Shown here: positions 1 to 60,213 of the stretch, piece after piece
Layout of the letters: each line of letters opens with the position of its first letter
Numbering within the stretch: the stretch's first letter is position 1
Assembly (NCBI GenBank): GCA_963924565.1
Contig: OZ004608.1
Coordinates: forward strand, 6,882,001-6,946,000
DNA length: 64,000 nucleotides
Source: Ascidiella aspersa
Taxonomy: Eukaryota
Direction of reading: 5' to 3'
Notes under the pieces: generated by a model
Seen by the model: only the letters and a program-made list of their open reading frames with translations
What the model was told of the DNA's origin: nothing
Databases searched by the model: none
Made by a program: the position numbers and the translations under genes

Positions 1-3000
1 CCAAACAATGGATTTTACATCGGTTTGAAGCGGATCGCAAGTGGTGGTGAGTTCCGATGGTTGGACGGGACAGCTTTGATGTATAAGTCATGGGGAAAGG
101 ATCAACCTGACAACCACAGCGGGCCCGAAAATTGCGTCACCATGGGTATATCGTGGGGTGTCAGTCTTAAGTGGTATGACATTTCTTGTGGAATATCTGC
201 AGGATACATATGCCAGAAAAATGATGGTGAGTGGACACTTAACCCTGTAAATACTTATTTTATAGGTTTTTAATTTAAACAAAAATGATGCTTTTACAAG
301 GAAAATGGAACAAATATTGCATTGCCATTTAGAAATTTCGCGTAGTTCAATGAAACATTTATTTTTATAGTAACAACAAAAAACAGCGAATCTGTCACTT
401 CATCTACAATACAAATATCTGGACCGTTTACGAGCGTAGAAAAAAATATATCAACTAGGTCATTACTCCACACAACAACCGTTGGTCGGAAGGTGGTGTC
501 CTATGGCTTATTGTCTACTGACAAAGGTAGTATAGACTTTGTAGAAAGAATGCTAACTTAGTCCCAAAATGATCTATACATATAAGTGAGTTTGATGTAG
601 GCCCGAATTGTCTTTTAAACGACCAAAGGAAATATACAACAACCAATTTAAAACGCTGGAAAAACAGGTTTAGCATAAAATCAGTTCACCTATAACTTTT
701 GGTTTGGTTCATTGAAATATCATGCTAATAATGCATTGCAAAATGTTTTTACCTTTATTGATGGTTGATTCTTGCTGTAAGGTTCCTTACCCCTTGCATT
801 TCCAAACACTCCGTAAGCCCTTTCCAAGAAGTGATATTTTTATACTATACATAACCTAAAAACAAGACAGAAGCAAGTAGATAATTCAACATCACCTGAT
901 TAATCGCTTGCAGCACACCATTGTGACTGCAAAAACAAATCATATTTATATCTAGAATTGGGGTATAAGTTTAATAATAATACAGATATAATAGGTATAG
1001 ACTACTGCTTAAATCAAACTTCTACTATCACGTTTTTATATCTTTAAAGCTTTTACGACATCAAACGAGGAAACTTTCCAGGTAACACCTTTCAACATAG
1101 CCATCATAGCTTCCTCGGCAGGTGGTGGTAGTCTGCTCCTGATTATCATCATAGCTGCTGTGTTGGTTTGTCTAAGGTTAGTGGCTAATTTAGGCCCAAC
1201 CATATAAAAATGCGATGCACTGCTTTAATCTATTCCAAAGTCGATAATTTTGTATACATCGTTTTCTAAAAGTTTTATTTAAAAAAGTAAAAGCATAAAG
1301 AATAAACTAAGAACAGAACTTAATTAACCGAAAATCGGTTTGTTTGGATGTTATGTGATAAATATATTTCGCTATAGTAAAAGCATCATCAGTATCTGAA
1401 AATATAACACAATATAAATCAAGATGTACGGTACTAAAACCCCAAACCTATACTGTTCACATATTCGATATCATTGATGTGCAACCAGAATCGTTTATTT
1501 TACCATTTGGATTCAGGCAGATTTTTTTATTCAAAAGAATGTAACAAGGAGGTGAAATTCTGAGGTGAAATTCATCTTTTTTGTTGTTGTTAGAAGGATG
1601 CAAAAATCTAAATCCGCGAAGAATACATCGAGTACAACAGATCCTACAGGTGTAATATGTTTGTACGTTTATAAAATATATCGTAGGCAAAACATGCTAT
1701 GCCCACGTATAATTTAGACAGGCTCGATACTAACTATAAGTATACTCCACAAAAGACGAACAAGAATTTTTCACAGTTCGAATGGCATAATTTGCTAGGT
1801 CTCGTCAAATCCCTTTGTCGCAAACTGTTTTGTCCGTGTAATAATTAGAAAATATATTGTGTTTATTTGCTTGACTTGGCATTTTTCTGGCAGCCCAGCA
1901 TGCTAACGTTGTTAGCGCGGATGAAAACGATGGAACTCACAACACCGAAACATCCAATCTGGCCAAAGTTGATTTTAAAGATGAAACCACTTACGCTAAA
2001 ATAAACGAAACAGAGGATTCAAAATCTGAAGAGGGCGACCATGTTTACTCGAAACTTAACACCAATGTACCATCCTCTTCCGACTTACCACCCCCACCAC
2101 CAATAACAGAATATCAGGACATAAAGCAGGGAGCCGAATATTCCACAATAGAAGCAAATATTAAAGTCGAAGCCGAACCGAGCTACGCAGCTATAGACCA
2201 AACTCATGTGAGCAACGAAGGAGAAACACCGTTGGGCGACCAGTACAGCACCATGTATGATATCGCAAAACTGCCGGAAGAAGTGGTAAAGATTTCTGAC
2301 GTCAACGAATCTCTATACACGTCAATGGCAGGTTAGATGGCATTGTATAGAACTATAGAACAACATGTTTAGTAGTATAATGTACAAATTTTCAATGCAA
2401 TTAAATCGTTACGACTCAAGGAGAACCATCAAGGTTCGGTGAGGCCATAACAACAACAACTTTAATTTAAAGTGAAAAACATCGTCAAAAAGGAGCCTCA
2501 ATATCGCATAGTATAACTTTTAACATGTTTGATAGTATAACCAAATTCTTTTTAAATGAACTACATCCCTAATGACCTTACAAACCATTTAAATTTAAAG
2601 TGAAAATATTTCTGTTAGAAATGTGGCGTTATTAGTTCTGACGATAAGGCTGCAACGACAATGACAACTACTGGGAGCTGTAGGCCCTTACGTCTAAGCT
2701 GATAAATTGATCATTAATATATACTGCTGCAGGTAATCAGAAAGATCGAAAGACTATTCGTGGAAGTTCAACAGCTACCCAGAAGGCTGTTACCGATCAG
2801 CGAACAACATCATCCACTGCTGAATTATTATTGCCTCCACCACCACCGGACTTTTACATAACTGTGCACAAAGGTGGTAACATAAGATTAAATACGTTGT
2901 GTTCGTTATCTTAACCAAATTAAATCACCCTCCTATCCAATATAATAAAATAGGGCCAGTTACGCATACAGTTGTATTTTAAAAGTTATCCTATAACCCA

Positions 3001-3925
3001 CATCAAGTGACTTATTCACGTATTATCAACTTCCACACATATTAATCTTCAATGATAAATTCCGGTAGTAAAACAAATGGTTCGAGCCGTAGATTAATTG
3101 ACAAATACACATAAACCACTATAATATATACAATTTAGCAAAATAATACATTGCTTTTGGCCAGGTTGTTTAAGAGCCAAAGGTTTGTTTTATTAACAAA
3201 ACAATGCAGGTACCTGACGTGTGAGTTTATCAGACATAAATGCTCACGGACATCATGTTGCGGCAGCAAAACCTTGGATCAATCGTGCTCTATTAGTTTT
3301 CCAATATTTGGATATGCAGAAAAAAAGCCTATTTTTCAAACACACCTCAACTACTAACGTTGACAAATTTAGCACGCAGATCAATGAATAGATTTCAGCA
3401 AGGATATTGAGTAGTAAAAGGCTTACGCTCATAACAACAAAGCACTGCAGTAGGACGGAAATTCTCAATATCACTTTATAAGTGATCAAAGCGCGGGGGC
3501 ACCATCTAACGGATACATAAAATAATTGTGTCTTAACCGTTTGCCACCGTATGACATACAATTAGAAACAAATTACTAATACAATACGTTGAGTAGCTAA
3601 TAACTTAATACCTCTTTTTCATACAAACTGCTATACCTTTAAAGAAAAGCAAAAATAAATGGCTCTAAAATATATTTCTATAAAATGTTTTATTTAAAGC
3701 TTCCCAAAAATTCTTCTGTATAGTTGTATCCCCGATTACTGCTAAAACAAGATTAAACTTTAGCACCATTTTAACTGACATATTTATATTTACTTTTTAG
3801 AACCTGAATATGAAAAGGCTTTGATCCTAGAAAAAGAACAGGATGACAAAGAAAAGAAACCATTGGTCACCGTTCAAGAAAAACCGGATTTAGATAGCCT
3901 TTATTCTGTTGTCAACAAAAATTAA
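1..3925 (+). CDS. Gene 1 (5' end outside window): type I TM C-type lectin receptor, QPD/WYD head, long Tyr- and Pro-rich tail
   Basis: Phase-compatible GT-AG exons: <1-226 (PNNGFYIGLKR...WLDG...QPDNHSGPENC...WYDISC...YICQK), 371-526 (S/T stalk), 1050-1176 (TM IAIIASSAGGGSLLLIIIIAAVLVCL), 1594-1649 (RRMQK), 1894-2331 (TTYAKI, HVYSKL, DLPPPPP, YQDI, YSTI, YAAI, YSTM, SLYTSM), 2733-2873 (LLLPPPPPDFYITVHK), 3801-3925 (DSLYSVVNKN*). Confidence 0.88.
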
Positions 3926-6312: not shown

Positions 6313-8330
6313 ATGCATAATATTCGGCTTGTAGTTCTATTTATTCTACTGTGTGAAGCTTCCAATGTGACGTGGCATAAGTTTGACTACTCAGAATTTT
6401 ATGTCGCCACCAACTCTTCAGCAAACTTCGATGGAGCACTTTTGTCTTGTACAGGCATGGGTGCGACTCTGGCCAAAGTCAACTCTTCAAACATTCAATT
6501 GTTTTCAGCAAGTTTAACAGGTATGTTGGCCTAAATATAATATTGATTAATACTTGACGAGGATTTTCGAAGCACCCTATAAATGTGTTTAGCACCAAGA
6601 AAGGGTCACTTCATTGGACTGAAGGGAGACCCATCACCTACTAACTTTACCTGGTTGGATGGTTCGATATTAACATGGTCTAATTGGAGAGGTGGTGAAC
6701 CGAATAATCTATTGGTGTCTGGAAACGAGGATTGTGTTGTTATGGGAGCTCCATGGGATAGCGGATATAGTTTCCTCTGGAACGACTATCCATGTTACTT
6801 TTCAGTAGCATATATTTGTCAGAGAACCAATGGTAAATACTTGTATGTTGACAGTTTAAGAGCGGTTGTAGAATTTTTTAATTTGTTGCTGTAAGTGCCG
6901 AGGATTTTGAAATGAGGATTTTGTTGTTATGTAAGCTTCTCGGAATTCAACATTTACCAGGATGTTGAGTTAAACAATTTTCCTTGCAATTATGCACTTC
7001 GCTAAATATGCTTGAGTTTGGGAATAGCTATGGGTTGGCAATATGATGTTATTGTGACTAATTCCTTAAAGATATTTGCAAACGCATTAAGAGTTCCCAA
7101 TGGCCAGTTTACAAAATGTAAGAACTACTAATGCCAACCCACTTATTTTGACTATTTAAAATTTAGTGTATATAACGAATATAAATACTGTTTTGTTACA
7201 CTTCACTTGCAGTAAGTGTTAAACCGTGCTTCGAAAACTTTATACGATTTCTATTTAGGTTGATCTAGCATTTTGATAAAATCGTGCTACATTTAGGCTT
7301 AGGAACTCAATCAAACACAACAAATATTTCAACCTCTGGAACCGAAGCAGTAACAAGACTGAGGTTTAAAACAGCAACACCCACAGAAAACAACAAGGAT
7401 GTGACGCAAACACATAAGACAACACTTGGTGTAGTGACAACGACTGTAGGTAAGTTAAACCTAATATTAAGAGTGGAACTTCTGCAATTGACAACAGGCC
7501 ATGTAATATTGCTTATAAAATACCTCTATGAATTCTAGGTGATTGGACCTGCATTTATGCCTCTCTTCGCCTGCCCATGATAGATGTATAGAAAAAAATA
7601 AAATTCAAACTTGTTTTCTTCAAAAATGTCATATTAAGATTCTTATTCGTTTCTGTTAGGTTGTGCCACCAGTAGCCCCCAAACAATCGCGACCAACCAG
7701 CAGGAAAACAGCTCACCAGTAGTCTTAGGAGCATTGGTCGCTTCCATAATTTTCCATTTTCTTATCACTGTCATTGCTATCTACTACAGAAAGTTAGTTT
7801 TGCTATATAAAATGGACTAGTGGTTACGTTCGATAACTGTATAACTTTCACTTCATATTTCCTGCAGAAAATATTCTACCGCAAGTCAATCAGCAAGTGC
7901 ATCATTTATTGGCACAGGTATGACCAAAAATTTAATATATATCCTATATCATAAAAACTTACCTATTGAATACAAATAAGCCAATGCAATGTTTATAGTA
8001 AATGGAAACCGTTACTAATGGACCATGCAGTAAAACTAAATTTAGATTTAATTTTCTGAATATTTTAAAACTTGACGTCTAGAATTGTAGCCATAGAAAT
8101 AGATATCATACAAAAGGCATCTTAAACGTATTTTTATAATCATTACGAAAATGAACTTAAATGTTTGTTTATGTGCTTAATATCTGTTTTATACAGAGCG
8201 TCAGGCGACAGTTCAATATGTCAACGTTCACTTAGCTGTTGGAGAGAAACGACAGAGTCAGGATTGTGCTACAATCAATAACGACCCTCTGCAAAGCGGC
8301 CGCGTTACGTTCCAAAGCGTCACTCAATAA
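6313..8330 (+). CDS. Gene 2: type I TM C-type lectin receptor, EPN/WND head, His in TM, short tail with YVNV
   Basis: Exons 6313-6520 (signal peptide + CTLD N-half), 6593-6832 (FIGL, WLDG, EPN, EDC, WND, YICQR), 7297-7449 (T-rich stalk), 7660-7792 (TM VVLGALVASIIFHFLITVIAIYY), 7868-7917, 8197-8330 (ERQATVQYVNVHL...VTQ*). All GT-AG and in phase. Confidence 0.88.
6911..7011 (+). pseudogene. Decayed CTLD C-terminal fragment in intron 2 of gene 2
   Basis: Reads NEDFVVM*ASRN...NNFPCNYALR*IC, versus NEDCVVMGAPWD...NDYPCYFSVAYIC in the exon just upstream. Confidence 0.55.
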
Positions 8331-10797: not shown

Positions 10798-13700
10798 ATG
10801 CATAATATCTGGCTGGTCGTTCTTTATATTCTACTGTGTGAGGCTTCCACTGTACCTTGGCATAAGTTAGACAACTTAGAATTTTATGTCGCCACCAACT
10901 CGTCAGCAAACTTCGATGGAGCACTTTCGTCTTGTAATAGCTTGGGGGCGACGCTGGCTAAAGTAAATTCTTCAAACATTTAATTATTTTTAGCAGATTT
11001 ATCAGGTATGTAAATATAAATTATTTATAAATATTGACGAGGACTTTTGACGCTTATTTGTGTGTTTAGCTCCAAGCAAGGGCTACTACATCGGTCTAAA
11101 GAGGAACCCATCACCTACTAACTTTTCTTGGTTGGATGGTTCAAAGTTAACTTGGTCGAGTTGGCGAGGCGGTGAACCGAACAATCATGCAACAAGTGGA
11201 AACGAGGATTGTGTGGTTATAGGAGCTCCTTGGGATAATAAAACTGGCTTTCTCTGGAACGATTACCCTTGCGGCTTTTCAATAGGATACATTTGTCAGA
11301 GAACCATCGGTAAATACTTGCATGTTGACAGTTCAAGAGCGGTTAAGATTTATGTTTAGTAAGTTGTTGACCATAAATTTATTTAAAAAACAATCGATTT
11401 TTTTTTATAACGCTTTATACAAATAATTCAGTTCCCCGTATGTTTACGTCTATCAACTTTATAGTACCGTAAATAAAAATCGTGCATAGAACAACTTATT
11501 TGGTTATGATAAATTTTGCTTAGGGTATTTTTGGTTTGATAAAGAAAGTGTCTTTGCAGTAAAACTATTTGTAACAAAAGCATTTCTGGCTAATACAAAT
11601 ACTATATTTATTTTCAGCTACCAACGAAACGGCTCCAATCGATTCACAAACATCGGTTATATTGGGAGCAACATTAAGCTGTATTATTATTGTGCTTCTT
11701 ATAATTTCAGCTGTCTTATTCTATAAGAGCTGGGTGTATGGTAAACAGCAGGCTTGGAAAGCTTGGTATCTTACGTACGATCATGTTGTAATATTCCAGG
11801 AAGCAGAATAAGCAGGCTTCAGACCGCCAACGTAATGAACCGACAGGTTGGTATGTTTGTTTATACGTTGAAAAAATAACACTACTCAGTTACAATATAA
11901 CTGTTAATTACAATAAACGCCAATTGCCTGCTTACATAAAAGCGTTTAGGTCCATGTTACGTGCATCACATAAAACACCTCAATTAAGTAATTGCCAAAA
12001 GCCAAATCTTGGAGTTCGTATTATCTTTAAGTTATATACATTATACTTTTGTAAAAACATTAAGTTAAAAATGTTTGGGTTGCTCATAAAATGACGTCCA
12101 GTTTACAAGACGAGCGAAAACTTTTAAATTTGAATTAAGAGAATGTTTTAAAGTTGCAGAAGGAAAACAGCTCTTAATTAATAAAGCTTGATAGCGTTAC
12201 TTAAAAGCACAATTTGGAGATGCTTGTCGCATAAAAACTACAATGCGTATTTTGTCGAATTTGTGATTTAGCGGCCATATAAATCGCATCTGCAATATGC
12301 TGCAAAATAGGTTAGGTTTACGATTAGTGCTGACATTTATTTTGACTCATGTAGAAGCAACAACTGACAACGCCCAAACAGCAAACCAGGAAGAAGAAAG
12401 GCGGCCACCAAGTGTGGAATACTCAACCTTAGCCGAAGCCCGACAGGATTTTTCTCAAAGTGTAACTTTAGAAGGCGAGAACGTCTATTCCCGACTCCAA
12501 CGTGAAGCCCCTCCTTCCAAATCAACTAATCTTACAGAATATCATCCAAATACTAATCCTCAACTTCCCGCTGAACTACACAACGCCTATTACGTCACAG
12601 ACGGAGGTATGACTATTTACTAGTGAATTCCAGACTATAAGTTGTTGTAGGCTGGACTTGCTGTACTACAAACCTGATTGATTATGCCAACTGATTAAGG
12701 TTGTAGCCTTTAGAAAAGCACTTAGTATATCGTGTCATTTTTTGTGAAATTAAAGGGTATTGCTGGATGCTCAAACCAGCGATAATTGAAAATTAATTCA
12801 ACGTCATTTGAATTAAAATTCTAGTTCCGACATTCAACAATTGTGTTCAAGGGTTTTTTGTTCATATAAATTAGTTATAAGGCAATTTAAATCCCTTGAT
12901 TATCTTTTATTGTGGTACAGTACAAACATCCGAATTCTCCGGTTCAAAGGCTGAACCCTTGACGAATTCAAGCAATATTCCCGGAAAACCGCCAGTGCAC
13001 GAAGTAACAGAGCAATGTGCTTCGCACGAAGTTTACGCGGCTGTCAGAAAAGGTTAGGAAATTCACTAAATTTCGAGAAGTTAGCGAGTTCAAAAACTAC
13101 AAACAGCAACCCAGGGTTGGCAGATTGCCAATTAACGGCCAAAACCGAGATTTTTTTTAGAATGCGCTTGGCCGAAGATATTTCTCTTGCCCTTTTGTCC
13201 GCTTTTTTCCTTTAATAGGCAAATTAACATTATAATATTTTGTTTATTAGTTTTTGCTAAAAGTCTGTGCGCTGGATAGTCGAAGCAATTACAAGGAATT
13301 TAATTCTCTAAAGTGAATGTTAAATGATGTTTGTGGACTTTAAGGCCGTATCTTGCACTTAAGCAGGTATGAGAACTTGTATTGTTGTTACAGTGGGAAA
13401 TCGCAACAATTAGATGTTTATAATATGGCTGAAAAATATTCACATTTGTAAATTTTAGTATTTATTAACGTTTGTCGCCTTAAGTGTGAGTGATGAATAC
13501 CTGAAACCAATTCGAGGGTGAGAGTTTCAGATCTCTGAAGTCTAATGTAAAACTTCGCGCGCCAAGCTCTGCGAGGTTACTAAAATAGCACATGTTATAC
13601 TGTATATCAGGAGCAGTTCTAATCTTTGAAGCATTTTTTAACTGCCAAGCAAAACTCTAAATACAACCCCTCTCAAAGTGTATTGGGCTTTAACAAATAA

Positions 13701-14044
13701 TTTAACCGTTGTCGTATCAGATTTGTCCTTTTATTTAAATTTAGCTGCTGGTCACCTTGCAAACTCCAGCGCAAAGCAAAACAATTTAAAGCAATTTTTA
13801 ACTTTAGCATAGCCATGTATCATACTTATTGTGTCATTTACATGTCTGCTGTGACATTATTTTTTTACCAAAATTTAAACAACACTATAAATGGTACTCG
13901 AAACATAAAAAAAATTCTCCGAGTTTTATTGTTTCAACAGAACCAAGGAAAAGAAAGACCCAAAATAAAGACACAACCGACCAACAAACTTCATCTAAAC
14001 CACACGACGTGGAACCAATATATACAGCTGTTAACAAGCAATAA
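10798..14044 (+). pseudogene. Gene 3: EPN/WND lectin receptor, paralog of gene 2, with an in-frame TAA in exon 1; no stalk exon; ITIM and EPIYT tail
   Basis: Exons 10798-11005 (TAA at 10981-10983 where gene 2 has CAA; frame continues LFLADLS to the donor), 11070-11309, 11618-11735 (TM VILGATLSCIIIVLLIISAVLFY), 11800-11846, 12355-12606 (VEYSTL, NVYSRL), 12921-13052 (EVYAAVRK), 13941-14044 (DVEPIYTAVNKQ*). Confidence 0.82.
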
Positions 14045-15841: not shown

Positions 15842-18800
15842 ATGCGCGTCGTTTTGACATTAGTTGCGTGTTTCCTTCTGAGTGAAACAACAGCTGTTAC
15901 TTGGCACCAGTTAAACGAGAAGGAATACTACATTGCTGCAACCGAGTCAACAAATTTTAATGGAGCACGTACCGCTTGTGGTAAGCTGAACGCGACTTTG
16001 GCAACAGTCAACTCTTCATCGATTCAGAATTTTCTGACAAATTTTACAGGTTTGTGACTAAAACTTTTACTTGGTTGTAGTTTTACATCGTTTGTGGCTT
16101 ACACAACGTTTGTTTTCAGTTCCAGGGGGATTTTACATCGGTTTGAAGCGGACAAAAGGTAGTGAATTCCAATGGCTGGATGGAACAGCTTTGATGTATA
16201 AGTCATGGGGAAATCAGCAACCTGACAACCACGATGGAAATGAGAAGTGCGTCACCATGGGTATTTCCTGGAGTAGCAATTTACTGTGGTATGACATTCC
16301 TTGCAGCAACACATTCGGGTACATTTGCCAGAGAAACATTGGTAAGTGCACAATCCTGTATTTTGCCATAAACTCGACTTAAAAATTAGTAACAAATGTC
16401 GTGTTATTATGTCTTTACATATCACTTACCTGACCTGTATAATATGTTAGTTTTTTCTATATATTTTCCAAACTTGTAAACTTGCCGATACGGATATGGA
16501 AACTCCACCACACGCTACACAAAGTTTTACATTTTTTCGTTTTGTCAGGAACGAACCGTTTTAAACTGACCCCATTCAGCAATCAGCATAGTGATACAGA
16601 AATCAAGTGTAAACACATAAAGCCCCATTGGTTTTAAAACAATTCTTTTAAAGTGATAAGATATCATACAAAGAAAAATAAGATTAACATCAACATATGC
16701 GTTTATGTTTTTGAAAGCCAAACTATATAAAGTCCTGTCCCCACACAACCTGGTCCGTCCCTGACCCTACGTAATCTATGTCATATTTCAAAGCTAAAAA
16801 AACTAACCGTACAATTAAACAGGGCGTCAGTATCCCAAAGTCATTAATATTTGTGTTGCGCTGATGTATAGTTTCCCGCTTAATAATATGTATTGATTTA
16901 ATTCACTCACAATTGCCAACGTGTGTGCTTATTCTTTATATGCTATTTCACCTATATTGACTTTTCTCCATTCGGAAGTAAAAAAATGTGTCACAACACA
17001 AACAGCCAAAGCGGAATTGTAACAAACATATTGATCTCTCTAATAGCATGTAATACAAGTTAAGGCAACAAAAATAAGAACTAATATAAGGTAATCCAAT
17101 TAAGACAACAAAATAAGTGCTTTTCCGTAACAAGGAATTATCTCTATGTGTGTGTCTTGCTTCCCGTGAGTAGTGCTAACATTATAGTAATGAACCATTT
17201 ACATATACCAAAGTAAGTGTCGTTTGGCCGTTTAAACTATTAAGCCTGGTGGTTTCTAAAGTAGAGTTACACTACGGAAAGTCGCATAAGATTAACTGCT
17301 CTGTTGTTCAATCGCCTGATTAATGGAGCGCCTGACGTTAGTGTCGCGTGACGTTGCTTTAAAATAATTCCGCATATTTTGGGGAATAGGATGCTGTTTT
17401 CCGTTTAGAATTTAAGTAGCATTCTAAAGTTCAGCTGACAATAAACGAGATTGAAACAGCACAATAACTATGCAACAAGGTTAAATTGTTTTAATGTTTG
17501 GCTCTTTTATTGTACAAAAAAATTGTATCAACCGACAGAGCAAAACTTGGAATCCTAATGAATTTGAAATATTTCTCGGCACGTTTAGGCGTTAAAACAT
17601 GGCATCTCGCTTTGCAATATAAAATTGAAGCAGCAACCGTATAAACTGTGATTTAAAACTTGGACGATACATTTGCCAGAGATTTATTGGTGGGTTTAGG
17701 CTATATTAATCATTTATATGCAACTACTGAAGACAACATTAATGAAATCTGTATAGCTTACCAGTAGGTCAAAATAATCTTTTCATTTTATAATTTATCA
17801 TAACCCTGTTAACGTTTGGTTTTAATTTATTCCTTTACTAATTTCATCATATTTAACACGGAAATCCGACGTTATGTAGCAGGTTTTCATTTTTTGCCCA
17901 ACAAAATGTTTTTGAATTCCAGCACCGTAATGTAAGCGAGCATAGGCGACCGTATTATTTTTTCCTTTTAACGCAGAAATTCCTACGACGGTTCTTCCGA
18001 CTACACATATAGCTACAACAACATCAACAACAACAACAACACTCACTCTCAAACCACAAACGAGCGCAGGTTTGAATCTGAACAGTTTTATGTACTGCTA
18101 ACTACTTTAACTGCAGTGAAAAAACGAACAGGAAGCGATAACAGCAATAATCCTTAAGGTTTTTGTCATTTTTGTAATTGAAATGCCTTGTGGTTTGTGA
18201 CAGCTTTGTGATTCGAATTAAGTCCATCATGTTGATAGAAATGGCTACCACATAATAAAACATGTGAACATCTAGTTAAAATAGATTTATTAACAAAAAG
18301 TCGATATTTTAAGGAAAATTACAAAGTGTTAATTTTTAGTCTGCGATGGTTTCCGGTGTGCTTACTCCTATTAAGCAAACCGGTGTGTTTACTGACTATA
18401 CCTGTTGACTAATTTCCATTAGGAAGTAAAAACATTTGTCACAACCCAAACAGCCACAGCGCAATGACTATAAGTGTATACACATGATAACAAACATATT
18501 GATCTATATAGTCAGAGGTAATACGAGTTTAAGTCAACAAAAATAAGAACTAATATAAGGTAATACCAATTAAGACAACAAAACAAGTGCTTTTCCGTAA
18601 CAAGGAATTATCTCTATGTGTGTGTCTTGTTTCCCGTGAGTAGTACTAACATTGCAGTAATGAACCATTTACATATACCAAAGTAAGTGTCGTTTGGCCG
18701 TTCAAACTATTAAGCCTCGTGGTTTCTACAGTAGAGTTACACTCCGGAAAGTCGCATAAGATTAACTGCTCTATTGTTCAATCGCCTGATTAATGGAGCG

Positions 18801-26859: not shown

Positions 26860-27415
26860 CAGGGTTACCATTTGCTCAGACCAAATAAGCACCTACTCCA
26901 AAAAAATAAGCACGCTACTAAAGATCAGGAACAGATCCAGGACTCCGGGGGTGATATCCAAGGTTTCAGAAATAACGTTATAATATAAAATGAAAACTTG
27001 AAAAACAGCTATTTTTGTTTGCGCAAAACGTAGCTTAATCGCGCGAAGCAAAAAAAATGTGTTTATTAGGTTAAAATTGGCAAGTCCTCACGTCAAGCCG
27101 AAGGTTTACTTGATTGCTAAAGCAACCTACCACGCTTTTATAGGCTAGAATGTACTTTTTAGATTTGGAATAAACAATCACAATCCATTGTTATTATGTA
27201 ATTTAATGCATTACTGTTATAATCTGGGTTAAATAACTGGATAAATATAAATAAATAATTGATAAAGAACGCTTTTAGAAATTAAAATAAGACAAACTAA
27301 GCACATAACTCTAAAATAAGCACGTTTCTTAGAAATAAGCACATTGGCGTTTTCTAAGACACTGCGCCCAAAAATAAGCACAAATCTTAGAAATAAGCAC
27401 GGTATGGTAACCCTG
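26860..27415. mobile_element. hAT-like MITE with subterminal AAATAAGCAC repeats
   Basis: Perfect 12-bp TIR CAGGGTTACCAT...ATGGTAACCCTG; 8-bp TSD cttataag; empty site in the paralogous unit at ~37353. Confidence 0.92.
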
Positions 27416-47707: not shown

Positions 47708-50700
47708 ATGGTCACACTAGTCAATGTGATGATTGCATTTACTACTGCAACAAGCTCATTTGCGATGTGGCACCAATCGGACAACTTTGAATACAAAACT
47801 GAAAGCAATGGAAAACGAACGTTTAAGGGAGCTTCTACGGCTTGCAGAGAAATGAATGCAACTCTGGCCAAAGTCAACTCTTCGGTTATCCAAATGTTCT
47901 TAGCCCAGAAAATTAAAAGAGGTAGCTTAAACAATTAAAGAGCGAATCACACGTAACTCATATTTATGAAATAGACAAATCATTCCTAAAGCTTAGTACT
48001 ATTCTGGGTCACTATCCATTTTACGGAAGTTAGAATAACGTAGGCCTAATCGTTCGAACAAAATTGAGTTCCGAGTAAGACCAAAATAGAAATACACAAA
48101 GTCGGAAAAACTTGTAAAGCGGAATGAAACAAGCCTTTCAGAAAACAACCTAAACGTACAGAATACGATTTTAACAATCTCTACTCTAAACACACAAAGG
48201 GTATTATTAAGTCTTTGGTTTAACTATTTTGTTGGTTAGTAAGGTGGTATCTAAAGTTTCGATTTAAATATTGAGCTTTTATTGGTTTTAGTGTGCGTTT
48301 CATTGTTCAGGTTCAAGCACTTACTATATTGGATTAACGAGAGGAACGGATGACAAGTTTAAATGGTTGGACGGATCAAGTTTAGCTTATACGAAATGGG
48401 AAAAGGGGGAGCCGAATGATTGGCTGTGGAATGATGAGGATTGTGCCGTGATGCAAGACAGTCCAGACTTTCTTTGGAATGATATATCATGCAGCCGAGA
48501 AGAAGCATACATTTGTCAGAGACCAATTGGTATGTATGCTCTGTGGGCTACCATCAAGATTTTGAATGACCTAAGTAATATCAGCAACTAAATATATATA
48601 TAAAGCAAAATTAAAGTTCTAGTTTTGTTTCTGCAAAAATATTGTTCCTCCTAAATAATTGCCTGTTTGTTAGACGAAAAGCAATATTCTTTCTGATAGA
48701 TTACAGGATTAGTCATGCACGATTTTGTATACCGAAACAAAATTTCACACAATACGTGAAATGTCAAATTGTGATTGTGTGATTGTGTATATAAATTTGT
48801 ACACATATCAGAACGGTACACAATCCATAATAATCTATAACCTTCGGGTTTTAACCAAAATGATTCCATATCCTAATAAATCTCTACAAATATAGTAAGG
48901 CTAGAAATATGTAGCCTTAGAAATATCTACCACCACCCCATGTTGTTGTATCCAATAGCATTGTTAGTTGTGTTCATATTGAAGGTTTAGCATTTAACAT
49001 TTTTGTTTTGTAGTTTTATGTATTTACGTCGGTTTACAGAGCTACTTAGCCCTACAACAGCTTCGTCGACTCATCAAACATCTGTTGAAGGCTTCACTAA
49101 TGCGGTGATAAACCCCACAACTGTTAACAATAATGCACTAACCAAGAACGTTCCAAAAGGTAGCCATTGACTTCACTTTCTCAAACGTAATGTACAGTAA
49201 AACGACAATTCATCAAAATTATTTGGTTTCGAAAACAGTTTAACCCTCTTTGTAGAACAAACTAAATATGAGCCCACTATCACGGATATGACGTCATACG
49301 AAGGAAAAACAATAAGCAGCAGCTCGTCATCAGGTCACGTGTTTTTCTATGCAATTTGGCAAAAGTTAATTCGCATTAAAAGCGTAGCATTAATTGCGGA
49401 AGTATTTTGATTTTGCAAAACGATTATAGCCTTATTTGTAACGTTAAGGCTGTACTTGCAGACGGCCTTACGGAGACGTATGCAAAGGAATCTGGATCCT
49501 CAACTGTTGTAATAATTGCATCGATCTCCGGAGTTGTGCTTCTTTGCCTTGCAGCTCTTGCTGTAGCATTGTGCATAAGGTGGGTTGAACTGCTTATAAC
49601 ATGTGTAGGTTAAGAGTCTAAATTGTTTAAAGGCGTCATGTTCCTTTTTTCAGGAAGAGCAGAGCGGTCGAGCAACAACCAAGCATTAATCACGATGAAG
49701 GTTAGTGTTACATTACCAAAGTATAGGACAATTCTCGCATATCTCGCCTTCTAAAAGCTCGAATTGAATTAGCCGGATGGTCAATAGTGTTGTCTGACAC
49801 TTATTATTCTATTCCGATACAAATATATAAACGCCGAGAAGCACGTTTATTGTTAACATGATCTTTCTAAGAAATTAACGTTTCATAGTGAGAAACGCTC
49901 ACAATGGAAAACGCTCACAGTGGCAAAATGCTTTGTTCTGACTTAAAAACGCTTATTTAGCATAGTTTGGTAAACGATATGTAACGATACCACGCTACTA
50001 TCGTACGAGAACAAATACTATAGTATCGAGGATCGGTGGTTGCAATGGTAATCGACATTTCGAAAAGTGACCAGGTTTGTTTCACATCCGGCCGTAAATG
50101 ATTTCATCCGAAGTTGTTCATTTGTGTTTTAAGCAACTATATGTGTTATTATTTAACTAAGTTAAGTACATAAAAATTGATGACATTTTAATTGAAATAG
50201 TTGTCGGAAACAAATCTTATTCTAAATTTGCTGATAGGTAATCAGGCCACGTCTCGGAATGTGAACGAAATTCCCGCAAACAACGAATACTCGTCTTTAA
50301 ACTTGGAAACTACTTCTCAACCACACAGCGGTGGTCAAAATGCGTCTGAAACTGGCAACGATTATTCGCATCTTAACTTATCCGGAATAGCAACTGGAAA
50401 TGTCACCTCACAAGAACAGGCGGTGTACTCCGTGGCAACGATTGGTAAGCCTTTAACATAGATGTCCTAGGAATTACATTCATCTAAAATCAACTAGCTT
50501 GGGATAGTGCAACGGCGGGCCTGCAAACTGAAGTCAAACATATTGACTCTGATTTTAATTGTATTTCCTCAAGACAAGAAATAATCAAGAAGAAACAATC
50601 AATCAATTATTGAATATCTCTAATTAATTAATTGAAATTATAGCCTATTTATATAAGCCTTTGTTTTAAAATATATTTTTTTTCAAACAACATACTCATA

Positions 50701-51024
50701 ACAGTAACACCCGAACCATTTAAAAATGAAAACATTTAGTAAGAATTTTTAAATTACATATATATATATATATCAACTGTCAATAAACGTCGCCAAAACT
50801 TTTCGTCAGAAACAAAGAAAAAGTCCAATGAAAAGGAAACTGTGGCTAACCCGCTTTACGGAAAAAGGAACAGTTACACTGAGAAGGAAACTGTGGCTAA
50901 CCCGCTTTACGGAGACAAGAACCCCTCCTCGGAAAAGGAAACTGTTGCCAACCCTCTCTATGCTTCCTCCAACCACGAGCAGCATTCAACGCCTGATGAT
51001 TTGTACTCGCAAGTAAAAAAGTGA
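47708..51024 (+). CDS. Gene 7: intact EPN/WND type I TM lectin receptor, NPLY x3 and LYSQVKK tail
   Basis: Exons 47708-47921, 48311-48529 (EPNDWLWNDEDC...WND), 49040-49159, 49256-49333, 49462-49579, 49654-49700, 50238-50444, 50810-51024. Confidence 0.9.
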
Positions 51025-57036: not shown

Positions 57037-60000
57037 ATGGTCACACTAGTCAATGTGATGATTGCATTTACTACTGCGACAAGTTCATTTGCGATGTGGC
57101 ACCAATCGGACAACTTTGAATACAGCATTCAAAGCAATGTAAAGCGAACGTTTAAGGGAGCTGCTACGGCTTGCAGGGAAATGAATGCATCTCTGGTTAA
57201 AGTCAACTCGTCGATTATCCAAATGTTCTTAGCTCAGAAAATTAAAACAGGTACTTAAACAATTAAAGAGCGAATCAAACGTAACTCATATTTATCAATT
57301 AGACAAATCATTCCTAAAGCTTAGTACTATTCTGGGTCACTATCCATTTTAAGGAAGTTAGAATAATGTAGGCCTATTCGTTCGAACAAAATTGAGTCCC
57401 GAGTAAGACCAAAATAGAAATACACAATGTCGGAAAAACTTGTAAAGCGAAATTAAACAAGCCTTTCAGAAAACAACCTAAACGGACAAAGTACGATTTT
57501 AACAATCTCTACTCTAAACACACATAGGGTATTACTGAGTCTTTGGTTTAACTATTATGTAAGGTGTTATCTAAAATTTCGATTTAAATATTGAGCTTTA
57601 TTGTTTTTAGTGTGCGTTTCATTGTTCAGGTTCAAACACTTACTATATTGGATTAACGAGAGGAACGGATGACAAGTTCAAATGGTTGGACGGATCAAGT
57701 TTAGCTTATACGAAATGGGATTGGTTGGAGCCAAATGATTGGCTGTGGAATGAGGATTGTGCCGTGATGAAAGACAGTCCAGACTTTTTGTGGAAAGATA
57801 TATCATGCAGCCGAAAAGAAAACTACATTTGTCAGAGACCAATTGGTATGTATACTGTATAGGCTATCCTACGTTGATTTTGAATGTCCTACGTTATACC
57901 AACAAAAAATTATATACATGAAGCAAAATTAAATTACTAATTTCGTTTCTGAAAAAACATTGTTTCCCCTAAGTTATTGCCTGTTTGTTAGACGAAATTT
58001 TTTTAAAATATTACCGAATCATTCAAACCCGTTTGTGTATAACAAAACATGCTTGCGCAGAATACCTGAGATGTCTCGAAAAATGCATACATGATTGTGT
58101 ATATAAAATCGTAGAGACCTCAGAACGTTACGACATCCATAATATCAATAACTGTCGGGTTTTGACCCAAATCATTTCATATCCTAATAAATTTATATAA
58201 ACAACGTAAGGCAAGAAATATCTATAGTCTTACCCATGTTGGTTTGTTAGTTGTGAGCATGTTGAAGGTTCGACATTGAATATTATTTTTTGGAGTTTTG
58301 TGAATTTACGTTGTTTACAGAGCTACTTAGCCCCACAACAGCTTCGTCGACTCATCAAACAACTGTTGAAGGCTTCACTAATGCGGCAATAAACCCCACA
58401 ACTGCTAACAATAATGCACTAACCAAGAACCTTCCAAAAGGTAGCCATTAACTTTCCTTCCTCAAATGTAATGTACAGTAAAACGCTTGTTTGAGGCAGT
58501 AGTTTAGGTAATTTTAAAATTCTCTTGGTTAAAATCGTAGTATCCATAGATCAGTTTTGTGTTCGAAAACCATTAATCCTAAATTCATTTCTGATGGTAA
58601 TTTTAAATATGTTATAACATAGCTTCGGCATAATAAAATAGTCCGTTTGGGTGCTATGTCAATACAGAAAAGCTGTTTTTAGGAAGTCTTTAGGAAAGTG
58701 TTTAACGTAAAGCTGAGTTTATATATATTGCACACTGCTCGCTTTCGTTATATTTCTATAAATTATTTTATGTTGGAGCACAAATATTCTAAGACACTTT
58801 ACAGGGTTTTGCTTGACCCCTTAAAATAATTGTTGCATCATTCAGCTTATTGTCCTACGGCCAAATAGAGTTCATCAAAATAATTTGGTTCGTAAACAGT
58901 TTCACCCTCTTTGTAGAACAATCTCAATACGAGCCAACCTCCACGGATATGACGTCATTCGAAGGAAAAACAATAAGCAGCAGCTCGTCATCAGGTCACG
59001 TGTTATTCCTTACATTTTCGCAAAAGTTAATTTGCATCAAGTATAGCCTTACTTGCGATAACATTTTGATTTTGCAAAATGATAAGCCTTATTTGTAACG
59101 TTAAGGCTGTACTTGCAGACGGCCGCACTAAGACGTATGCAAAGGAATCTGGATCATCAACTGTTGTAATAATTGCATCGATCTCCGGAGTTGTGCTTCT
59201 TTGCCTTGCAGCACTTGCTGTAGCATTGTGCATAAAGTGGGTGTAACTGATTGAAGCATACGGTGGTTAAATGTCAAAATTGTGTAATTGTGCTTTGTTC
59301 CTTATTTTAGGAAGAGCCGAGCGGTCAAGCAACAACCAAGTATTAATCACAATGAAGGTTAGTGTTACATTACCCAGGTATATAGCCTATAGGAAAATTC
59401 TCGCATATCTCGCTTGCACGAAAATCAAATTGAATTAGCCGGAGAGTCAATAGTGTTGTCCGACACTTCTTATTTTATTCCGATACAAAAACCAAGTATT
59501 TCGGGAAAAAAAGTTTGAGCCGAACTGATCAAATTACAACGTAATTGCAACGTTAAGTTTTCAAAATGAAAAACAATGTTAAACACAAAATATAAATAAA
59601 CACCTAACAATTATTGTTAACATGCTTTTTCTAACAAATTTACGTTTTTTGGTGGAAAAAACTCACAGTAAACCAACGCTGTGTTTCACATTTGTACACG
59701 GTTATTTAGCACTGTTTTGTATCAGAATCGCGCGTGTTAACAATTTAATTACTTAATATTCATTTTAATTTCTAGGTAAAATATAAAGAATTACGGTTAA
59801 CTTAACGTCATTAACAGTAATAACTGAGCTATGTGCAGTAAAACGAGTTATTTGATTGTAAAGCACATGTTACTAGAAAAGGCACAAACGAGTAAGATTT
59901 CTATTAATACAATTTTTTAAACAACGTGGGGATGCGGCATTTTTCCGTAACAATTGAAAGCTATATTTTATTTCAAGAGGGAGAAAACAATAGTGAAGAC

Positions 60001-60213
60001 GAAAATGGCTACATTCGACTCAACCCTGTGCTACTATTACAAGAAGATGAAAACGGATACTTGCGATCTAACAAAGTGGTACCAGTCCAAGTATCGGTGG
60101 TTGGTGGACAGGAATACATGGAATTAAACGTCACTGGTTTACCCGAGGCTGGAGGTTCAGCTGTAATCTCAAACGCTTTTCAAGGGGCTCCAGTTTGCAA
60201 TAATATACTTTAG
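57037..60213 (+). CDS. Gene 8: EPN/WKD type I TM lectin receptor with a divergent hemITAM-like tail
   Basis: Exons 57037-57250, 57630-57845 (KWDWLEPNDWLWNEDC...WKD), 58321-58440, 58917-58994, 59119-59236 (TM), 59311-59357, 59978-60213 (EGENNSEDENGYIRLNPVLLLQEDENGYLRSNK...GQEYMELNVTGL...NNIL*). The last acceptor is a weaker AAG but is in phase. Confidence 0.83.
58486..58870. mobile_element. ~385-bp insertion in intron 3 of gene 8, probable DNA-transposon derivative
   Basis: Absent from genes 5-7 (gtaaaacg|acaattcatc); imperfect inverted ends cttgtttgaggcagtag / ctacggccaaatagag. Confidence 0.5.

What the first reader, a model, noticed from the sequence alone, without database searches (positions are those of the whole stretch)
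1..60213. Candidate invertebrate 'lectin receptor complex': eight tandem type I CTLD receptors mixing sugar-binding heads with inhibitory-type or activating-type tyrosine tails
Seen: eight same-strand genes share one exon plan (signal+CTLD-a / CTLD-b / stalk / TM / juxtamembrane / Tyr exons). Most introns are phase 1, there are two head classes (QPD, EPN), at least five tail types, plus null copies and relics. Known: vertebrate immune receptor clusters (Ly49/NKG2/Dectin, KIR/LILR, Siglec, CEACAM) and the cnidarian Alr locus combine tandem expansion, ITIM/ITAM-type tails and pseudogenes. The vertebrate NK-complex lectins are type II proteins with N-terminal tails, whereas these are type I with C-terminal tails. 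Inference: an independently evolved, fast-turnover innate-immunity or allorecognition receptor family.
Basis: partly seen in the sequence, partly recalled or inferred. Interest (0 to 1): 0.9.

Follow-up and report, generated by a model that had tools for sequence, protein, structure and literature searches.

The report
Sea-squirt lectin receptor gene array
Eight neighbouring genes in this probable sea-squirt genome encode membrane receptors with a C-type lectin head and interchangeable tyrosine-motif tails. They are a small slice of an array of well over 100 such genes that looks like a fast-evolving recognition-receptor family, but no expression or function has been shown.

Summary
[quoted passage not shown] All splice sites are GT-AG; every intron is phase 1 except the one after the TM exon.

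- **Broken copies:** gene 3 has a nonsense codon and gene 5 a frameshift.
- **Real coding sequence:** the tail exon of gene 1's type is open in 13 paralogs, with dN/dS about 0.33 and six invariant tyrosines.
- **Context:** the window is a slice of at least 128 CTLD exons spread over 1.67 Mb of one contig. This scan already described the far edge of the same array (s1-790843).
- **Shuffling:** tails are swapped by recombination in introns; gene 4 is a hybrid.

The inhibitory-versus-activating reading is too simple. I found ITIM-consensus, ITSM-consensus, YxxM and one hemITAM-like motif, but no canonical ITAM and no charged TM residue. The most prominent motif is a repeated NPxY, as in engulfment and endocytic receptors. 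The same tail cassette also follows SUEL-lectin, LCCL and Ig exons elsewhere in the genome.

The parts
1..226 (+). Gene 1, exon 2 (second half of the CTLD; QPD, WYD). Exon 1 lies just upstream of the window.
   Evidence: Pfam Lectin_C E=2.4e-8; donor at 226, phase 1; upstream exon 1 seen in L031
371..526 (+). Gene 1 stalk exon (phase 1 to 1)
   Evidence: splice options
1050..1176 (+). Gene 1 TM exon (phase 1 to 2)
1594..1649 (+). Gene 1 juxtamembrane mini-exon (phase 2 to 1; donor could also be 1658 or 1682)
1894..2331 (+). Gene 1 large tyrosine exon: two ITSM-consensus motifs, YSKL, YSTI-x11-YAAI, two YxxM
   Evidence: 13 open paralogs; alignment A3; dN/dS 0.33
2733..2873 (+). Gene 1 proline-run/YITV exon (phase 1 to 1)
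   Evidence: similar ORFs in paralogs
3801..3925 (+). Gene 1 terminal exon ending in SLYSVVNKN and stop (ITIM consensus)
6313..6520 (+). Gene 2 exon 1 (signal peptide plus first half of the CTLD)
6593..6832 (+). Gene 2 exon 2 (second half of the CTLD; EPN, EDC, WND)
   Evidence: Pfam E=3.4e-9
7303..7449 (+). Gene 2 stalk exon (acceptor could also be 7297)
7660..7792 (+). Gene 2 TM exon (phase 1 to 2)
7868..7917 (+). Gene 2 mini-exon (50 nt, phase 2 to 1)
8197..8330 (+). Gene 2 terminal exon with a single ITIM-consensus motif, VQYVNV
10798..11005 (+). Gene 3 exon 1, with an in-frame TAA at 10981-10983 where gene 2 has CAA: a null copy
   Evidence: alignment A1
11070..11309 (+). Gene 3 exon 2 (EPN, WND)
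   Evidence: Pfam E=2.6e-11
11618..11735 (+). Gene 3 short stalk plus TM exon
11800..11846 (+). Gene 3 mini-exon (47 nt, phase 2 to 1)
12355..12606 (+). Gene 3 tyrosine exon (VEYSTL ITIM consensus, YSRL)
13941..14044 (+). Gene 3 terminal exon (PIYTAVNKQ and stop)
15842..16049 (+). Gene 4 exon 1
16120..16341 (+). Gene 4 exon 2 (QPD, WYD; 72% identical in protein to gene 1's exon 2)
   Evidence: Pfam E=1.5e-11
17977..18069 (+). Gene 4 stalk exon, copy A
19357..19446 (+). Gene 4 stalk exon, copy B (part of an internal tandem duplication of about 1.4 kb)
19939..20017 (+). Gene 4 TM exon (phase 1 to 2)
20624..20673 (+). Gene 4 candidate mini-exon (50 nt, phase 2 to 1; least certain)
21724..21987 (+). 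Gene 4 tyrosine exon, the only copy in the genome (YNAV, YSSL, VQYSSI, DAVYSAV)
22432..29700 (+). Stretch colinear with the 3' half of the 8.9-kb units; the recombination breakpoint lies in gene 4's last intron
   Evidence: blastn, 74-90% identity
22686..23002 (+). Gene 4 terminal exon: five NPLY repeats, then LYSQVKK and stop
30043..30256 (+). Gene 5 exon 1
30637..30852 (+). Gene 5 exon 2 (EPN, WND)
31284..31403 (+). Gene 5 stalk exon
31706..31822 (+). Gene 5 TM exon with a 1-nt deletion: frameshift and a stop before the membrane span
31897..31943 (+). Gene 5 mini-exon
32457..32663 (+). Gene 5 YSSL/YSHL/AVYSVA exon
33029..33294 (+). Gene 5 terminal exon (four NPLY)
38934..39147 (+). Gene 6 exon 1
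39528..39743 (+). Gene 6 exon 2 (EPN, WND)
40175..40294 (+). Gene 6 stalk exon
40597..40714 (+). Gene 6 TM exon
40789..40835 (+). Gene 6 mini-exon
41357..41563 (+). Gene 6 YSTL/YSHL exon
41667..41881 (+). Gene 6 terminal exon (two NPLY and one NTLY)
47708..47921 (+). Gene 7 exon 1 (ATG, signal peptide, first half of the CTLD)
48311..48529 (+). Gene 7 exon 2 (EPN, EDC, WND, three Cys)
   Evidence: Pfam E=2.9e-5
49040..49159 (+). Gene 7 stalk exon
49256..49333 (+). Candidate second stalk exon (78 nt, phase 1 to 1). Counterparts at 31500-31577, 40391-40468 and 58917-58994. Inclusion is unproven.
49462..49579 (+). Gene 7 TM exon (phase 1 to 2)
49654..49700 (+). Gene 7 mini-exon (47 nt, basic, phase 2 to 1)
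50238..50444 (+). Gene 7 YSSL/YSHL/AVYSVA exon
50810..51024 (+). Gene 7 terminal exon (three NPLY, then LYSQVKK and stop)
57037..57250 (+). Gene 8 exon 1
57630..57845 (+). Gene 8 exon 2 (EPN, but WKD instead of WND)
58321..58440 (+). Gene 8 stalk exon
59119..59236 (+). Gene 8 TM exon
59311..59357 (+). Gene 8 mini-exon
59978..60213 (+). Gene 8 terminal exon of another type (EDENGYIRL hemITAM-like, EDENGYLRS, YMEL)
63915..64000 (+). Start of a ninth copy that runs off the window. Its signal peptide and mature part lie in different frames, and its second CTLD exon lacks one Cys.

Best explanation
The window is a 64-kb slice of a very large tandem array of genes for single-pass type I membrane receptors, specific to this lineage as far as the databases show. 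Each protein has a cleavable signal peptide, one canonical four-cysteine C-type lectin domain, a Ser/Thr-rich stalk, an uncharged membrane span, a basic juxtamembrane stretch and a disordered cytoplasmic tail. The tail is built from exchangeable phase-1 exons that carry short tyrosine motifs.

Shown: the gene structures, the domain, the family size, purifying selection on heads and tails of the older copies, fast change in the heads of the young copies, hybrid genes and null copies.

Inferred mechanism: the EPN/WND heads bind mannose-type glycans through calcium, while the QPD/WYD heads may bind something else. Ligand clustering lets Src-type kinases phosphorylate the tail tyrosines, and the tail type sets the output.
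- Repeated V-A-N-P-L-Y units plus YxxL (genes 4-7) would recruit PTB adaptors of the CED-6/GULP, Dab or Numb kind, and SH2 proteins. That would drive uptake or engulfment, as in CED-1, Draper and MEGF10.
- ITIM-, ITSM- and YxxM-type motifs (genes 1-3) would dock SH2 phosphatases, adaptors or PI3K.
- Gene 8's acidic G-Y-x-x-L motif would act like a hemITAM.

Unequal crossing-over in introns keeps making new head/tail combinations and new copies. The most likely biological role is glycan pattern recognition by blood cells or barrier epithelia: phagocytic or immune-type receptors.
For: Domain and gene plan. The profile of the second CTLD exon matches solved calcium-dependent sugar-binding domains best per single domain: Mincle 59.9 bits, aggrecan 58.5, MBP-A 57.8 and mannose-receptor CTLD4 55.8. 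EPN, an acidic residue before the Cys, and WND are present in genes 2, 3, 5, 6 and 7. Tails are real coding sequence: 13 paralogs of gene 1's tail exon are all open at 51-69% identity. In that exon the median dN/dS is 0.33 at dS about 0.58, and 6 of the 42 invariant columns are Tyr. In the same subfamily dN/dS is 0.21 for exon 1 and 0.42 for exon 2. Motif inventory. The NPLY...LYSQVKK exon is conserved in distant parts of the array. A similar cassette follows SUEL-lectin, LCCL and Ig exons elsewhere. Heads of the young copies change at or above the neutral rate: for genes 5 and 8, pN is 0.060 against 0.027 in flanking non-coding DNA, Fisher p=0.006. Array size. Hybrid gene 4. NPxY with YxxL or ITAM in engulfment receptors: PMC8092387. 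Type I ascidian receptors with ITIM, hemITAM and YxxV motifs, together with the Src, Syk and SHP machinery in an ascidian: PMC12582321.
Against: Exon borders are predictions from frame, splice consensus and paralog conservation; the mini-exons of genes 1 and 4 and the second stalk exon are uncertain. Short tyrosine motifs arise easily by chance in disordered tails, and several here miss the strict consensus. The QPD heads and gene 8 lack the Asn of WND, so calcium and sugar binding is doubtful for them. The excess of nonsynonymous change is significant for one of six pairs only and is borderline after correction. At least two of the eight copies are broken. The 95-99% identical units could be inflated by assembly of two haplotypes.
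Confidence: 0.6

Rival explanations
1. These are constitutive endocytic or scavenger cargo receptors rather than signalling receptors. The repeated hydrophobic-x-N-P-x-Y and YxxΦ motifs would be coated-pit sorting signals read by clathrin adaptors, as in the LDL receptor and the mannose receptor family. The array would diversify what is taken up, for example food-derived or microbial glycans in a filter feeder.
For: V-A-N-P-L-Y fits the hydrophobic-x-N-P-x-Y internalisation signal, and it is repeated 2-5 times. In the related cassettes elsewhere in the genome the proline is often replaced (VDNILY, VDNVLY), leaving an NxxY core like the mannose receptor's signal as I recall it. The heads match mannose-receptor-family CTLDs well. 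The type I topology is the same as in that family.
Against: Genes 1, 2, 3 and 8 have no NPxY at all but carry ITIM-, ITSM-, YxxM- or hemITAM-like motifs. Six tyrosines with their flanks are invariant over dS about 0.5, more than a sorting signal needs. The two readings overlap, since engulfment receptors both signal and internalise.
Confidence: 0.2
2. It is an allorecognition or self-incompatibility receptor complex (colony fusion, blood-cell contact reaction or gamete self-sterility). Polymorphic heads would read self glycans, and the balance of inhibitory and activating tails would set the outcome, as proposed for the Botryllus Fester and FcoR families.
For: The locus shares the genomic hallmarks of such systems: a large linked multigene family, pseudogenes, copy turnover, fast-changing heads and mixed tail types. 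The C-terminal YxxV motifs resemble the FcoR core motifs (PMC12582321).
Against: No polymorphism or haplotype data, no expression data, and it is unknown whether the species is colonial. Older subfamily members are under ordinary purifying selection. The heads look like microbial or mannose-type sugar binders. The ascidian allorecognition genes I found described are not CTLD genes (PMC12582321).
Confidence: 0.1
3. It is a non-immune adhesion or matrix receptor family (for tunic, epithelium or development). NPxY repeats would tie the receptors to the cytoskeleton through talin- or kindlin-type PTB-like domains, as in integrin beta tails or the type I lectin layilin.
For: NPxY repeats; the type I single-CTLD architecture is shared with layilin and chondrolectin (group VIII in PMC514892). 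That layilin binds talin is from my own knowledge.
Against: More than 100 rapidly turning-over copies with pseudogenes are unusual for housekeeping adhesion receptors. Many tails have no NPxY.
Confidence: 0.05
4. The array is largely dead or partly an assembly artefact: decaying duplicates, with the near-identical 8.9-kb units being collapsed or expanded haplotypes.
For: Two of eight copies are broken and a ninth probably is. Units 5-7 are 95-99% identical, including introns. No transcripts have been seen.
Against: dN/dS is 0.21-0.42 across old paralogs, and 143 of 150 scored second CTLD exons have no internal stop. The units differ by specific indels, a different tail in gene 8 and mosaic divergence, which two haplotypes do not explain.
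Confidence: 0.05

Closest known systems
Predicted urochordate membrane proteins with CTLD or Ig ectodomains and ITIM/ITAM tails (from memory: Azumi et al. 2003, Immunogenetics 55:570, on Ciona)
   Same: Tunicate; CTLD ectodomain joined to tyrosine-motif tails; read as ancient activating and inhibitory receptors. The claim is relayed in PMC2248247, which cites its reference 82. The Azumi citation itself is listed in PMC5465252 and PMC514892.
   Different: I could not read that paper. No sequence relative from Ciona or any other species turned up. I found no report of a 1.67-Mb array of more than 100 genes, of modular phase-1 tail exons, or of NPxY repeats.
Botryllus schlosseri FcoR (fester co-receptor) family, PMC12582321
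   Same: Ascidian type I receptors in polymorphic tandem clusters. Tails carry ITIM, hemITAM and YxxI/L/V or [A/D]VYxxV core motifs, and motifs are swapped between alleles and splice forms. Gene 4's DAVYSAV fits the core-2 motif.
   Different: FcoR ectodomains belong to the Ig superfamily, not the CTLD family. The paper's text does not mention NPxY. No sequence homology was tested, because I had no FcoR sequences.
CED-1 / Draper / MEGF10 engulfment receptors (PMC8092387)
   Same: Type I receptors whose tails combine NPxY (read by the CED-6/GULP PTB domain) with YxxL or ITAM (read by Syk-family kinases); genes 4-7 combine the same two motif types.
   Different: Their ectodomains are EMI/EGF, they are single-copy genes, and they have one NPxY rather than 2-5 tandem repeats. 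This is a functional analogy only.
Vertebrate type I single-CTLD receptors: group XV Bimlec and group VIII (PMC514892); from my own knowledge these correspond to CD302, layilin and chondrolectin
   Same: Signal peptide, one CTLD, neck, TM and a short cytoplasmic tail.
   Different: They are single conserved genes. They are not among the 60 best solved-structure matches. Orthology is unsupported.
Vertebrate NK-gene-complex and Dectin clusters (Ly49, NKG2, Dectin-1, CLEC-2)
   Same: Tandem clusters of CTLD receptors with paired signalling outputs, pseudogenes and fast evolution; a hemITAM-like acidic G-Y-x-x-L motif in gene 8.
   Different: Those are type II proteins with N-terminal tails, and many lack the calcium/sugar site. 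Their activating forms pair with adaptors through a charged TM residue, which is absent here.
Mannose receptor family (MRC1, DEC-205, PLA2R, Endo180, FcRY)
   Same: Type I topology and good CTLD sequence similarity. From my own knowledge, a tyrosine-based NxxY-type internalisation motif.
   Different: That family has 8-10 CTLDs plus ricin-type and FNII domains; the genes here have one CTLD.

Membership tests
C-type lectin-like domain superfamily (Pfam PF00059) | Significant match to the Lectin_C profile over the whole domain | tested here: met
   Second-exon ORFs score above the curated cut-off (25.2-45.4 bits against 22.6) and cover positions 38-107. First-exon ORFs cover positions 2-36 at 14-23 bits.
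C-type lectin-like domain superfamily (Pfam PF00059) | Four canonical cysteines (one in helix 1, three in the second half) | tested here: met
   Read from the translations. The ninth copy lacks one.
Calcium-dependent sugar-binding C-type CRD | EPN or QPD, an acidic residue before the Cys, and WND (the ligands of calcium site 2) | tested here: inconclusive
   The full set is present in genes 2, 3, 5, 6 and 7. Genes 1 and 4 have QPD but WYD, and gene 8 has EPN but WKD. The gene-1 subfamily has WYD, WFD or WLD throughout. Binding itself was not tested.
Vertebrate NK-complex / Dectin-type CTLD receptors (groups II and V) | Type II topology: N-terminal cytoplasmic tail and C-terminal CTLD | tested here: not met
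   Signal peptide and CTLD come first; the TM and tail exons follow.
ITIM-bearing inhibitory receptors | [ILVS]xYxx[ILV] in the cytoplasmic tail | tested here: met
   SLYSVV (gene 1), VQYVNV (gene 2), VEYSTL (gene 3) and VQYSSI (gene 4); none in genes 5-8. VHYANV is present in most gene-1-type paralogs.
ITIM-bearing inhibitory receptors | Recruitment of SHP-1, SHP-2 or SHIP after phosphorylation | not testable with these tools
   Needs biochemistry.
ITAM-bearing activating receptors | Yxx[LI]-x6-8-Yxx[LI] | tested here: not met
   No match with a 6-8 residue spacer. One match to the relaxed 6-12 form (YSTI-x11-YAAI, gene 1). The other pairs have spacers of 5, 15 or 21.
Adaptor-paired activating receptors (KIR-S, NKG2C, Ly49H type) | A charged residue in the TM segment and a short tail | tested here: not met
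   No K, R, D or E in any membrane core.
hemITAM receptors (Dectin-1, CLEC-2) | [DE][DE][DE]xYxxL | tested here: inconclusive
   Gene 8 has EDENGYIRL, where the acidic triad sits one residue further from the Tyr. The strict pattern is not matched; the second copy is YLRS.
CED-1 / Draper / MEGF10 | NPxY plus YxxL or ITAM in the tail | tested here: met
   Genes 4-7 have 2-5 NPLY and YSSL, YSTL or YSHL.
CED-1 / Draper / MEGF10 | EMI and EGF-repeat ectodomain | tested here: not met
   The ectodomain is a single CTLD.
Mannose receptor family | Ricin-type domain, FNII domain and 8-10 CTLDs | tested here: not met
   One CTLD per gene, and no other domain exon between heads.
Botryllus FcoR family | Ig-superfamily ectodomain | tested here: not met
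   The ectodomain is a CTLD. Only the tail motifs are alike.
Group VIII / XV type I single-CTLD receptors | Sequence orthology to layilin, chondrolectin or CD302 | tested here: inconclusive
   The architecture is the same, but none is among the best 60 solved-structure matches. No tree was made.

The most novel reading that the evidence does not exclude
The whole 1.67-Mb array would be a tunicate counterpart of the vertebrate NK and leukocyte receptor complexes, evolved independently from type I lectins. It would comprise more than 100 polymorphic glycan-reading receptors whose heads diversify under selection. Their outputs (engulf, inhibit, activate) would be re-dealt by exon shuffling of one tail toolkit, which the genome also uses for SUEL-lectin, LCCL and Ig receptors. 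The array would decide self versus non-self, or friend versus foe, among microbes or neighbouring individuals.
Probability: 0.15. Interest if true: 0.85.

Novelty: new variant of a known kind. Interest (0 to 1): 0.6.

Why it matters
Tunicates are the closest living relatives of vertebrates, and how they discriminate microbes and foreign cells without antibodies is still open. A receptor array of more than 100 genes joining a sugar-reading head to interchangeable engulfment-, inhibitory- and activating-type tails would be a concrete, testable candidate for that job. It would also be a clean natural example of how symmetric phase-1 exons let evolution re-pair recognition with output. The finding that unrelated ectodomains (CTLD, SUEL lectin, LCCL, Ig) use the same tail cassette points to one shared, still unidentified cytoplasmic pathway. 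That pathway could be found by pull-down.

Tried and rejected

**Database relatives.**
- The whole-library HMMER search with the profile of the second CTLD exon was swamped by giant multi-CTLD proteins, so the best 150 hits were uninformative.
- A 225-aa stop-free ORF of a paralog (exon 1, a readable intron and exon 2) gave no match at E<=1e-5.
- Gene 1's tail ORF gave none at E<=1e-3.
- A TM-plus-tail ORF of the SUEL-lectin receptor gave none.
- These blanks are bounded by that tool's length window and word index.

**Pfam on tails.** Nothing meaningful; a Phage_tail_X hit with no matched stretch is a repeat artefact.

**Automatic exon chaining.** It over-predicted spurious exons. I used it only to suggest candidates that I then checked by phase and paralog conservation.

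**Poly(A) hexamers after the stop codons.** Uninformative in this AT-rich DNA.

All searches were exon by exon and by reference.

**Readings rejected.** Membership of the NK-complex lectins (wrong topology), a canonical ITAM reading, and adaptor pairing through a charged TM residue.

Full report
**What is in the window.** The DNA is AT-rich eukaryotic sequence (35% G+C, no N). Earlier notes of this scan take the genome for an ascidian; I did not test that. Pfam's Lectin_C model matches two kinds of ORF that alternate along the + strand. A first-half ORF follows a hydrophobic N-terminus and covers profile positions 2-36. A second-half ORF covers positions 38-107 of 107. A tblastn search with the family's own exons finds exactly eight heads. 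Each is followed in the same order by stalk, membrane and tail exons, nothing lies on the other strand, and there are no stray fragments.

**Gene models.** Gene 7 closes as a seven-exon, 379-codon model: 47708-47921, 48311-48529, 49040-49159, 49462-49579, 49654-49700, 50238-50444 and 50810-51024. Every border is GT-AG, and the intron phases are 1,1,1,2,1,1. The other genes fit the same plan.
- The membrane exon always ends in phase 2.
- A basic mini-exon of 47-56 nt restores phase 1.
- All further tail exons are phase 1 to 1.
- A 78-nt phase 1-1 Ser/Thr-rich ORF between the stalk and membrane exons of genes 5-8 may be a second stalk exon.

These are predictions. 

**Heads.** Each head has one Cys in the first half and three in the second, the canonical four. 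The profile of the second exon matches solved calcium-dependent sugar-binding domains. Per single domain the best are Mincle (59.9 bits), aggrecan (58.5), MBP-A (57.8) and mannose-receptor CTLD4 (55.8). The multi-CTLD mannose-receptor family ranks first only by summed score. Genes 2, 3, 5, 6 and 7 have EPN, an acidic residue before the Cys, and WND. Genes 1 and 4 have QPD but WYD, and gene 8 has EPN but WKD. So "sugar-binding heads" is a fair reading for the EPN/WND class and an open question for the rest.

**Tails.** A motif scan exon by exon gives the following.

| Gene | Motifs found in the tail |
|---|---|
| 1 | two ITSM-consensus motifs, YSKL, YSTI-x11-YAAI, two YxxM, C-terminal SLYSVV |
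| 2 | a short tail with only VQYVNV (ITIM consensus) |
| 3 | VEYSTL, YSRL, terminal IYTAV |
| 4 | YNAV, YSSL, VQYSSI, DAVYSAV, then five V-A-N-P-L-Y repeats and LYSQV |
| 5-7 | YSSL or YSTL, YSHL, AVYSVA, then two to four NPLY repeats and LYSQV |
| 8 | EDENGYIRL, EDENGYLRS, YMEL |

No ITAM with a 6-8 residue spacer exists, the strict hemITAM pattern is not met, and no membrane core holds a charged residue. An inhibitory-versus-activating dichotomy is therefore too simple. Most tails are mixed, and the most conspicuous motif is NPxY.

**Are the tails real coding sequence?** Yes, by conservation.
- Gene 1's 145-codon tail exon has 12 further copies at C2:6.747-6.872 Mb, all open, at 51-69% identity.
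- Across the 13 copies the median dN/dS is 0.33 at dS about 0.58.
- Six tyrosines are invariant (in TAYAKI, VYSKL, EYSVI, SYAAI, QYSSI and LYTSM). All nine Tyr columns keep Tyr in at least 8 of the 13 copies.
- In the same genes the first head exon has dN/dS 0.21 and the second 0.42. The changes pile up in the loops around QPD/EPN and W-x-D.

**Young copies.** Genes 5-8 lie in four tandem units of about 8.9 kb. The first three are 95-99% identical through introns and spacers. The fourth shares only the part from the upstream flank to the mini-exon, then has a different tail. In these copies the head exons differ more than their surroundings, and mostly by amino-acid changes. For genes 5 and 8 I count 20.5 nonsynonymous against 0.5 synonymous differences. 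pN is 0.060 against 0.027 in the 5' flank and intron 1 (Fisher p=0.006; binomial p=0.011). The other five pairs are not significant. This suggests relaxed or diversifying selection at the binding face; it is not proof.

**Turnover and shuffling.**
- Gene 3 carries TAA where gene 2 has CAA in exon 1.
- Gene 5 has lost one T in the membrane exon, outside any homopolymer, which puts a stop before the membrane span.
- A ninth copy starts at 63915. Its signal peptide and mature part are in different frames, and one Cys is missing from its second head exon.
- Gene 4 is a hybrid. Its QPD head is 72% identical to gene 1's and its tyrosine exon is unique in the genome. From 22432, inside its last intron, to 29700 it is colinear with the 3' half of the 8.9-kb units at 74-90% identity.

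Because every tail module is a symmetric phase-1 exon, such intronic crossovers always give an open frame.

**Context.** The window is G000:C2:6882001-6946000 in a 308.6-Mb assembly. The family profile of the second head exon finds 150 scored places out of 263 candidates:
- 78 on C2 between 5.87 and 6.67 Mb, mostly on the - strand;
- 50 between 6.74 and 7.54 Mb, mostly on the + strand;
- 12 at 2.39-2.79 Mb, and 10 elsewhere.

Only 7 of the 150 have internal stops. The eight genes therefore sit in an array of at least 128 copies over 1.67 Mb, in two oppositely oriented arms. Tail types run in blocks:
- 13 copies of gene 1's type sit upstream of and into the window;
- four copies of the YSSL/YSHL exon exist;
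- eight copies of gene 8's type exist, mostly just downstream;
- NPLY exons occur in both arms.

Sampled members of the other arm show the same head, stalk and membrane exons. This scan has met the array before: s1-790843, 990 kb upstream, called it about 50 genes in 0.5 Mb. My count is larger.

**A shared tail cassette.** Weak matches of the NPLY exon on other contigs led to same-strand membrane-plus-tail ORFs. These carry repeats of E-x-V-D/A-N-P/I/V-L/I-Y, often followed by D-x-Y-x-x-V-N/D-K. They lie just downstream of a SUEL-lectin exon (PF02140, 1.7e-14), an LCCL exon (PF03815, 1.6e-17) and Ig exons (PF00047, 2.3e-5). That the ectodomain and tail belong to one gene there is inferred from proximity. 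The cassette is thus a general tool of this genome's type I receptors, not a feature of the lectin array alone.

**Comparison with what is known.**
- A review states that genome-wide analysis found extracellular C-type lectin and Ig domains together with ITIMs, ITAMs and their signalling molecules (PMC2248247). From memory its source is Azumi et al. 2003 on Ciona; that citation is listed in PMC5465252 and PMC514892. I could not read the paper.
- The Botryllus FcoR family is the closest published analogue. These are type I Ig-superfamily receptors in polymorphic clusters, with ITIM, hemITAM, YxxI/L/V and [A/D]VYxxV motifs that are swapped between alleles and splice forms. The Src, Syk and SHP machinery is present in that ascidian (PMC12582321).
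- NPxY plus YxxL or ITAM is the tail logic of CED-1, Draper and MEGF10, read by CED-6/GULP and Syk-family kinases (PMC8092387).
- Type I single-CTLD receptors exist in vertebrates as groups VIII and XV (PMC514892).
- I found no report of a type I CTLD array of this size, or of this tail cassette. The protein databases gave no relative.

**Most likely working.** The proteins are glycan-reading surface receptors whose tail type sets the response: uptake or engulfment through NPxY and YxxL, damping through ITIM or ITSM, and PI3K or Syk-type activation through YxxM or the acidic G-Y-x-x-L motif. New head/tail pairs arise continually by unequal crossing-over. The genes, domains, selection and shuffling are shown. 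The ligands, phosphorylation, binding partners, cell type and immune role are inferred.

**Rivals.** The rival readings are pure endocytic cargo receptors, allorecognition, adhesion, and a mostly dead or mis-assembled array. The report sections weigh each of them.

Noticed in passing
L033 (G000:C7:27496000-27504000) 3852-4187 and 5155-5883; L034 (C7:27404000-27412000) 3703-3903 and 5254-5970; L035 (C1:40865000-40873000) 3109-3405 and 5087-7935; L032 (C6:28753000-28761000) 4681-6046: Type I receptor genes with SUEL-lectin, LCCL, Ig or unassigned ectodomain exons carry tails made of the same kind of repeat as genes 4-7 (E-x-V-D/A-N-P/I/V-L/I-Y, often followed by D-x-Y-x-x-V-N/D-K). This looks like a genome-wide shared cytoplasmic cassette with no database relatives.
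   Followed up: partly
G000:C2:5.87-7.54 Mb (window = 6882001-6946000): The array has two arms of opposite orientation: mostly - strand at 5.87-6.67 Mb and mostly + strand at 6.74-7.54 Mb, with the heads facing a centre near 6.7 Mb. A second cluster of 12 copies lies at C2:2.39-2.79 Mb. I did not look at the centre.
   Followed up: no
window 63915-64000, continuing in L017 1-2000: A ninth family member starts at the window's end. Its signal peptide and mature part are in different frames, its second CTLD exon lacks a cysteine, and its tail is of gene 8's type. It is probably a pseudogene.
   Followed up: partly
window 16900-19520: Gene 4 contains an internal tandem duplication of about 1.4 kb that doubles its Thr-rich stalk exon (17977-18069 and 19357-19446).
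   Followed up: partly
window 5029-5937 and 8942-9760: The spacers after genes 1 and 2 share a repeated segment with long open frames on the + strand (a Cys-rich stretch, then an Ala/Pro/Ser-rich stretch). It may be a mobile element or the remnant of the duplication unit.
   Followed up: no
L027 (G000:C2:6842500-6849000) 1-606: One member of the gene-1 subfamily has a 202-codon open frame of unrelated, transposase-like appearance where its head exons should be. Its TM and tail exons are intact.
   Followed up: no
L015 (G000:C2:5903000-5909000) 3165-3839 (-) and L016 (C2:6593000-6599500) 3049-3672 (-): In some paralogs the short first intron is stop-free in frame, so exon 1, the intron and exon 2 read as one ORF of 208-225 codons. 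Intron retention there would insert about 27 residues into the lectin fold.
   Followed up: no
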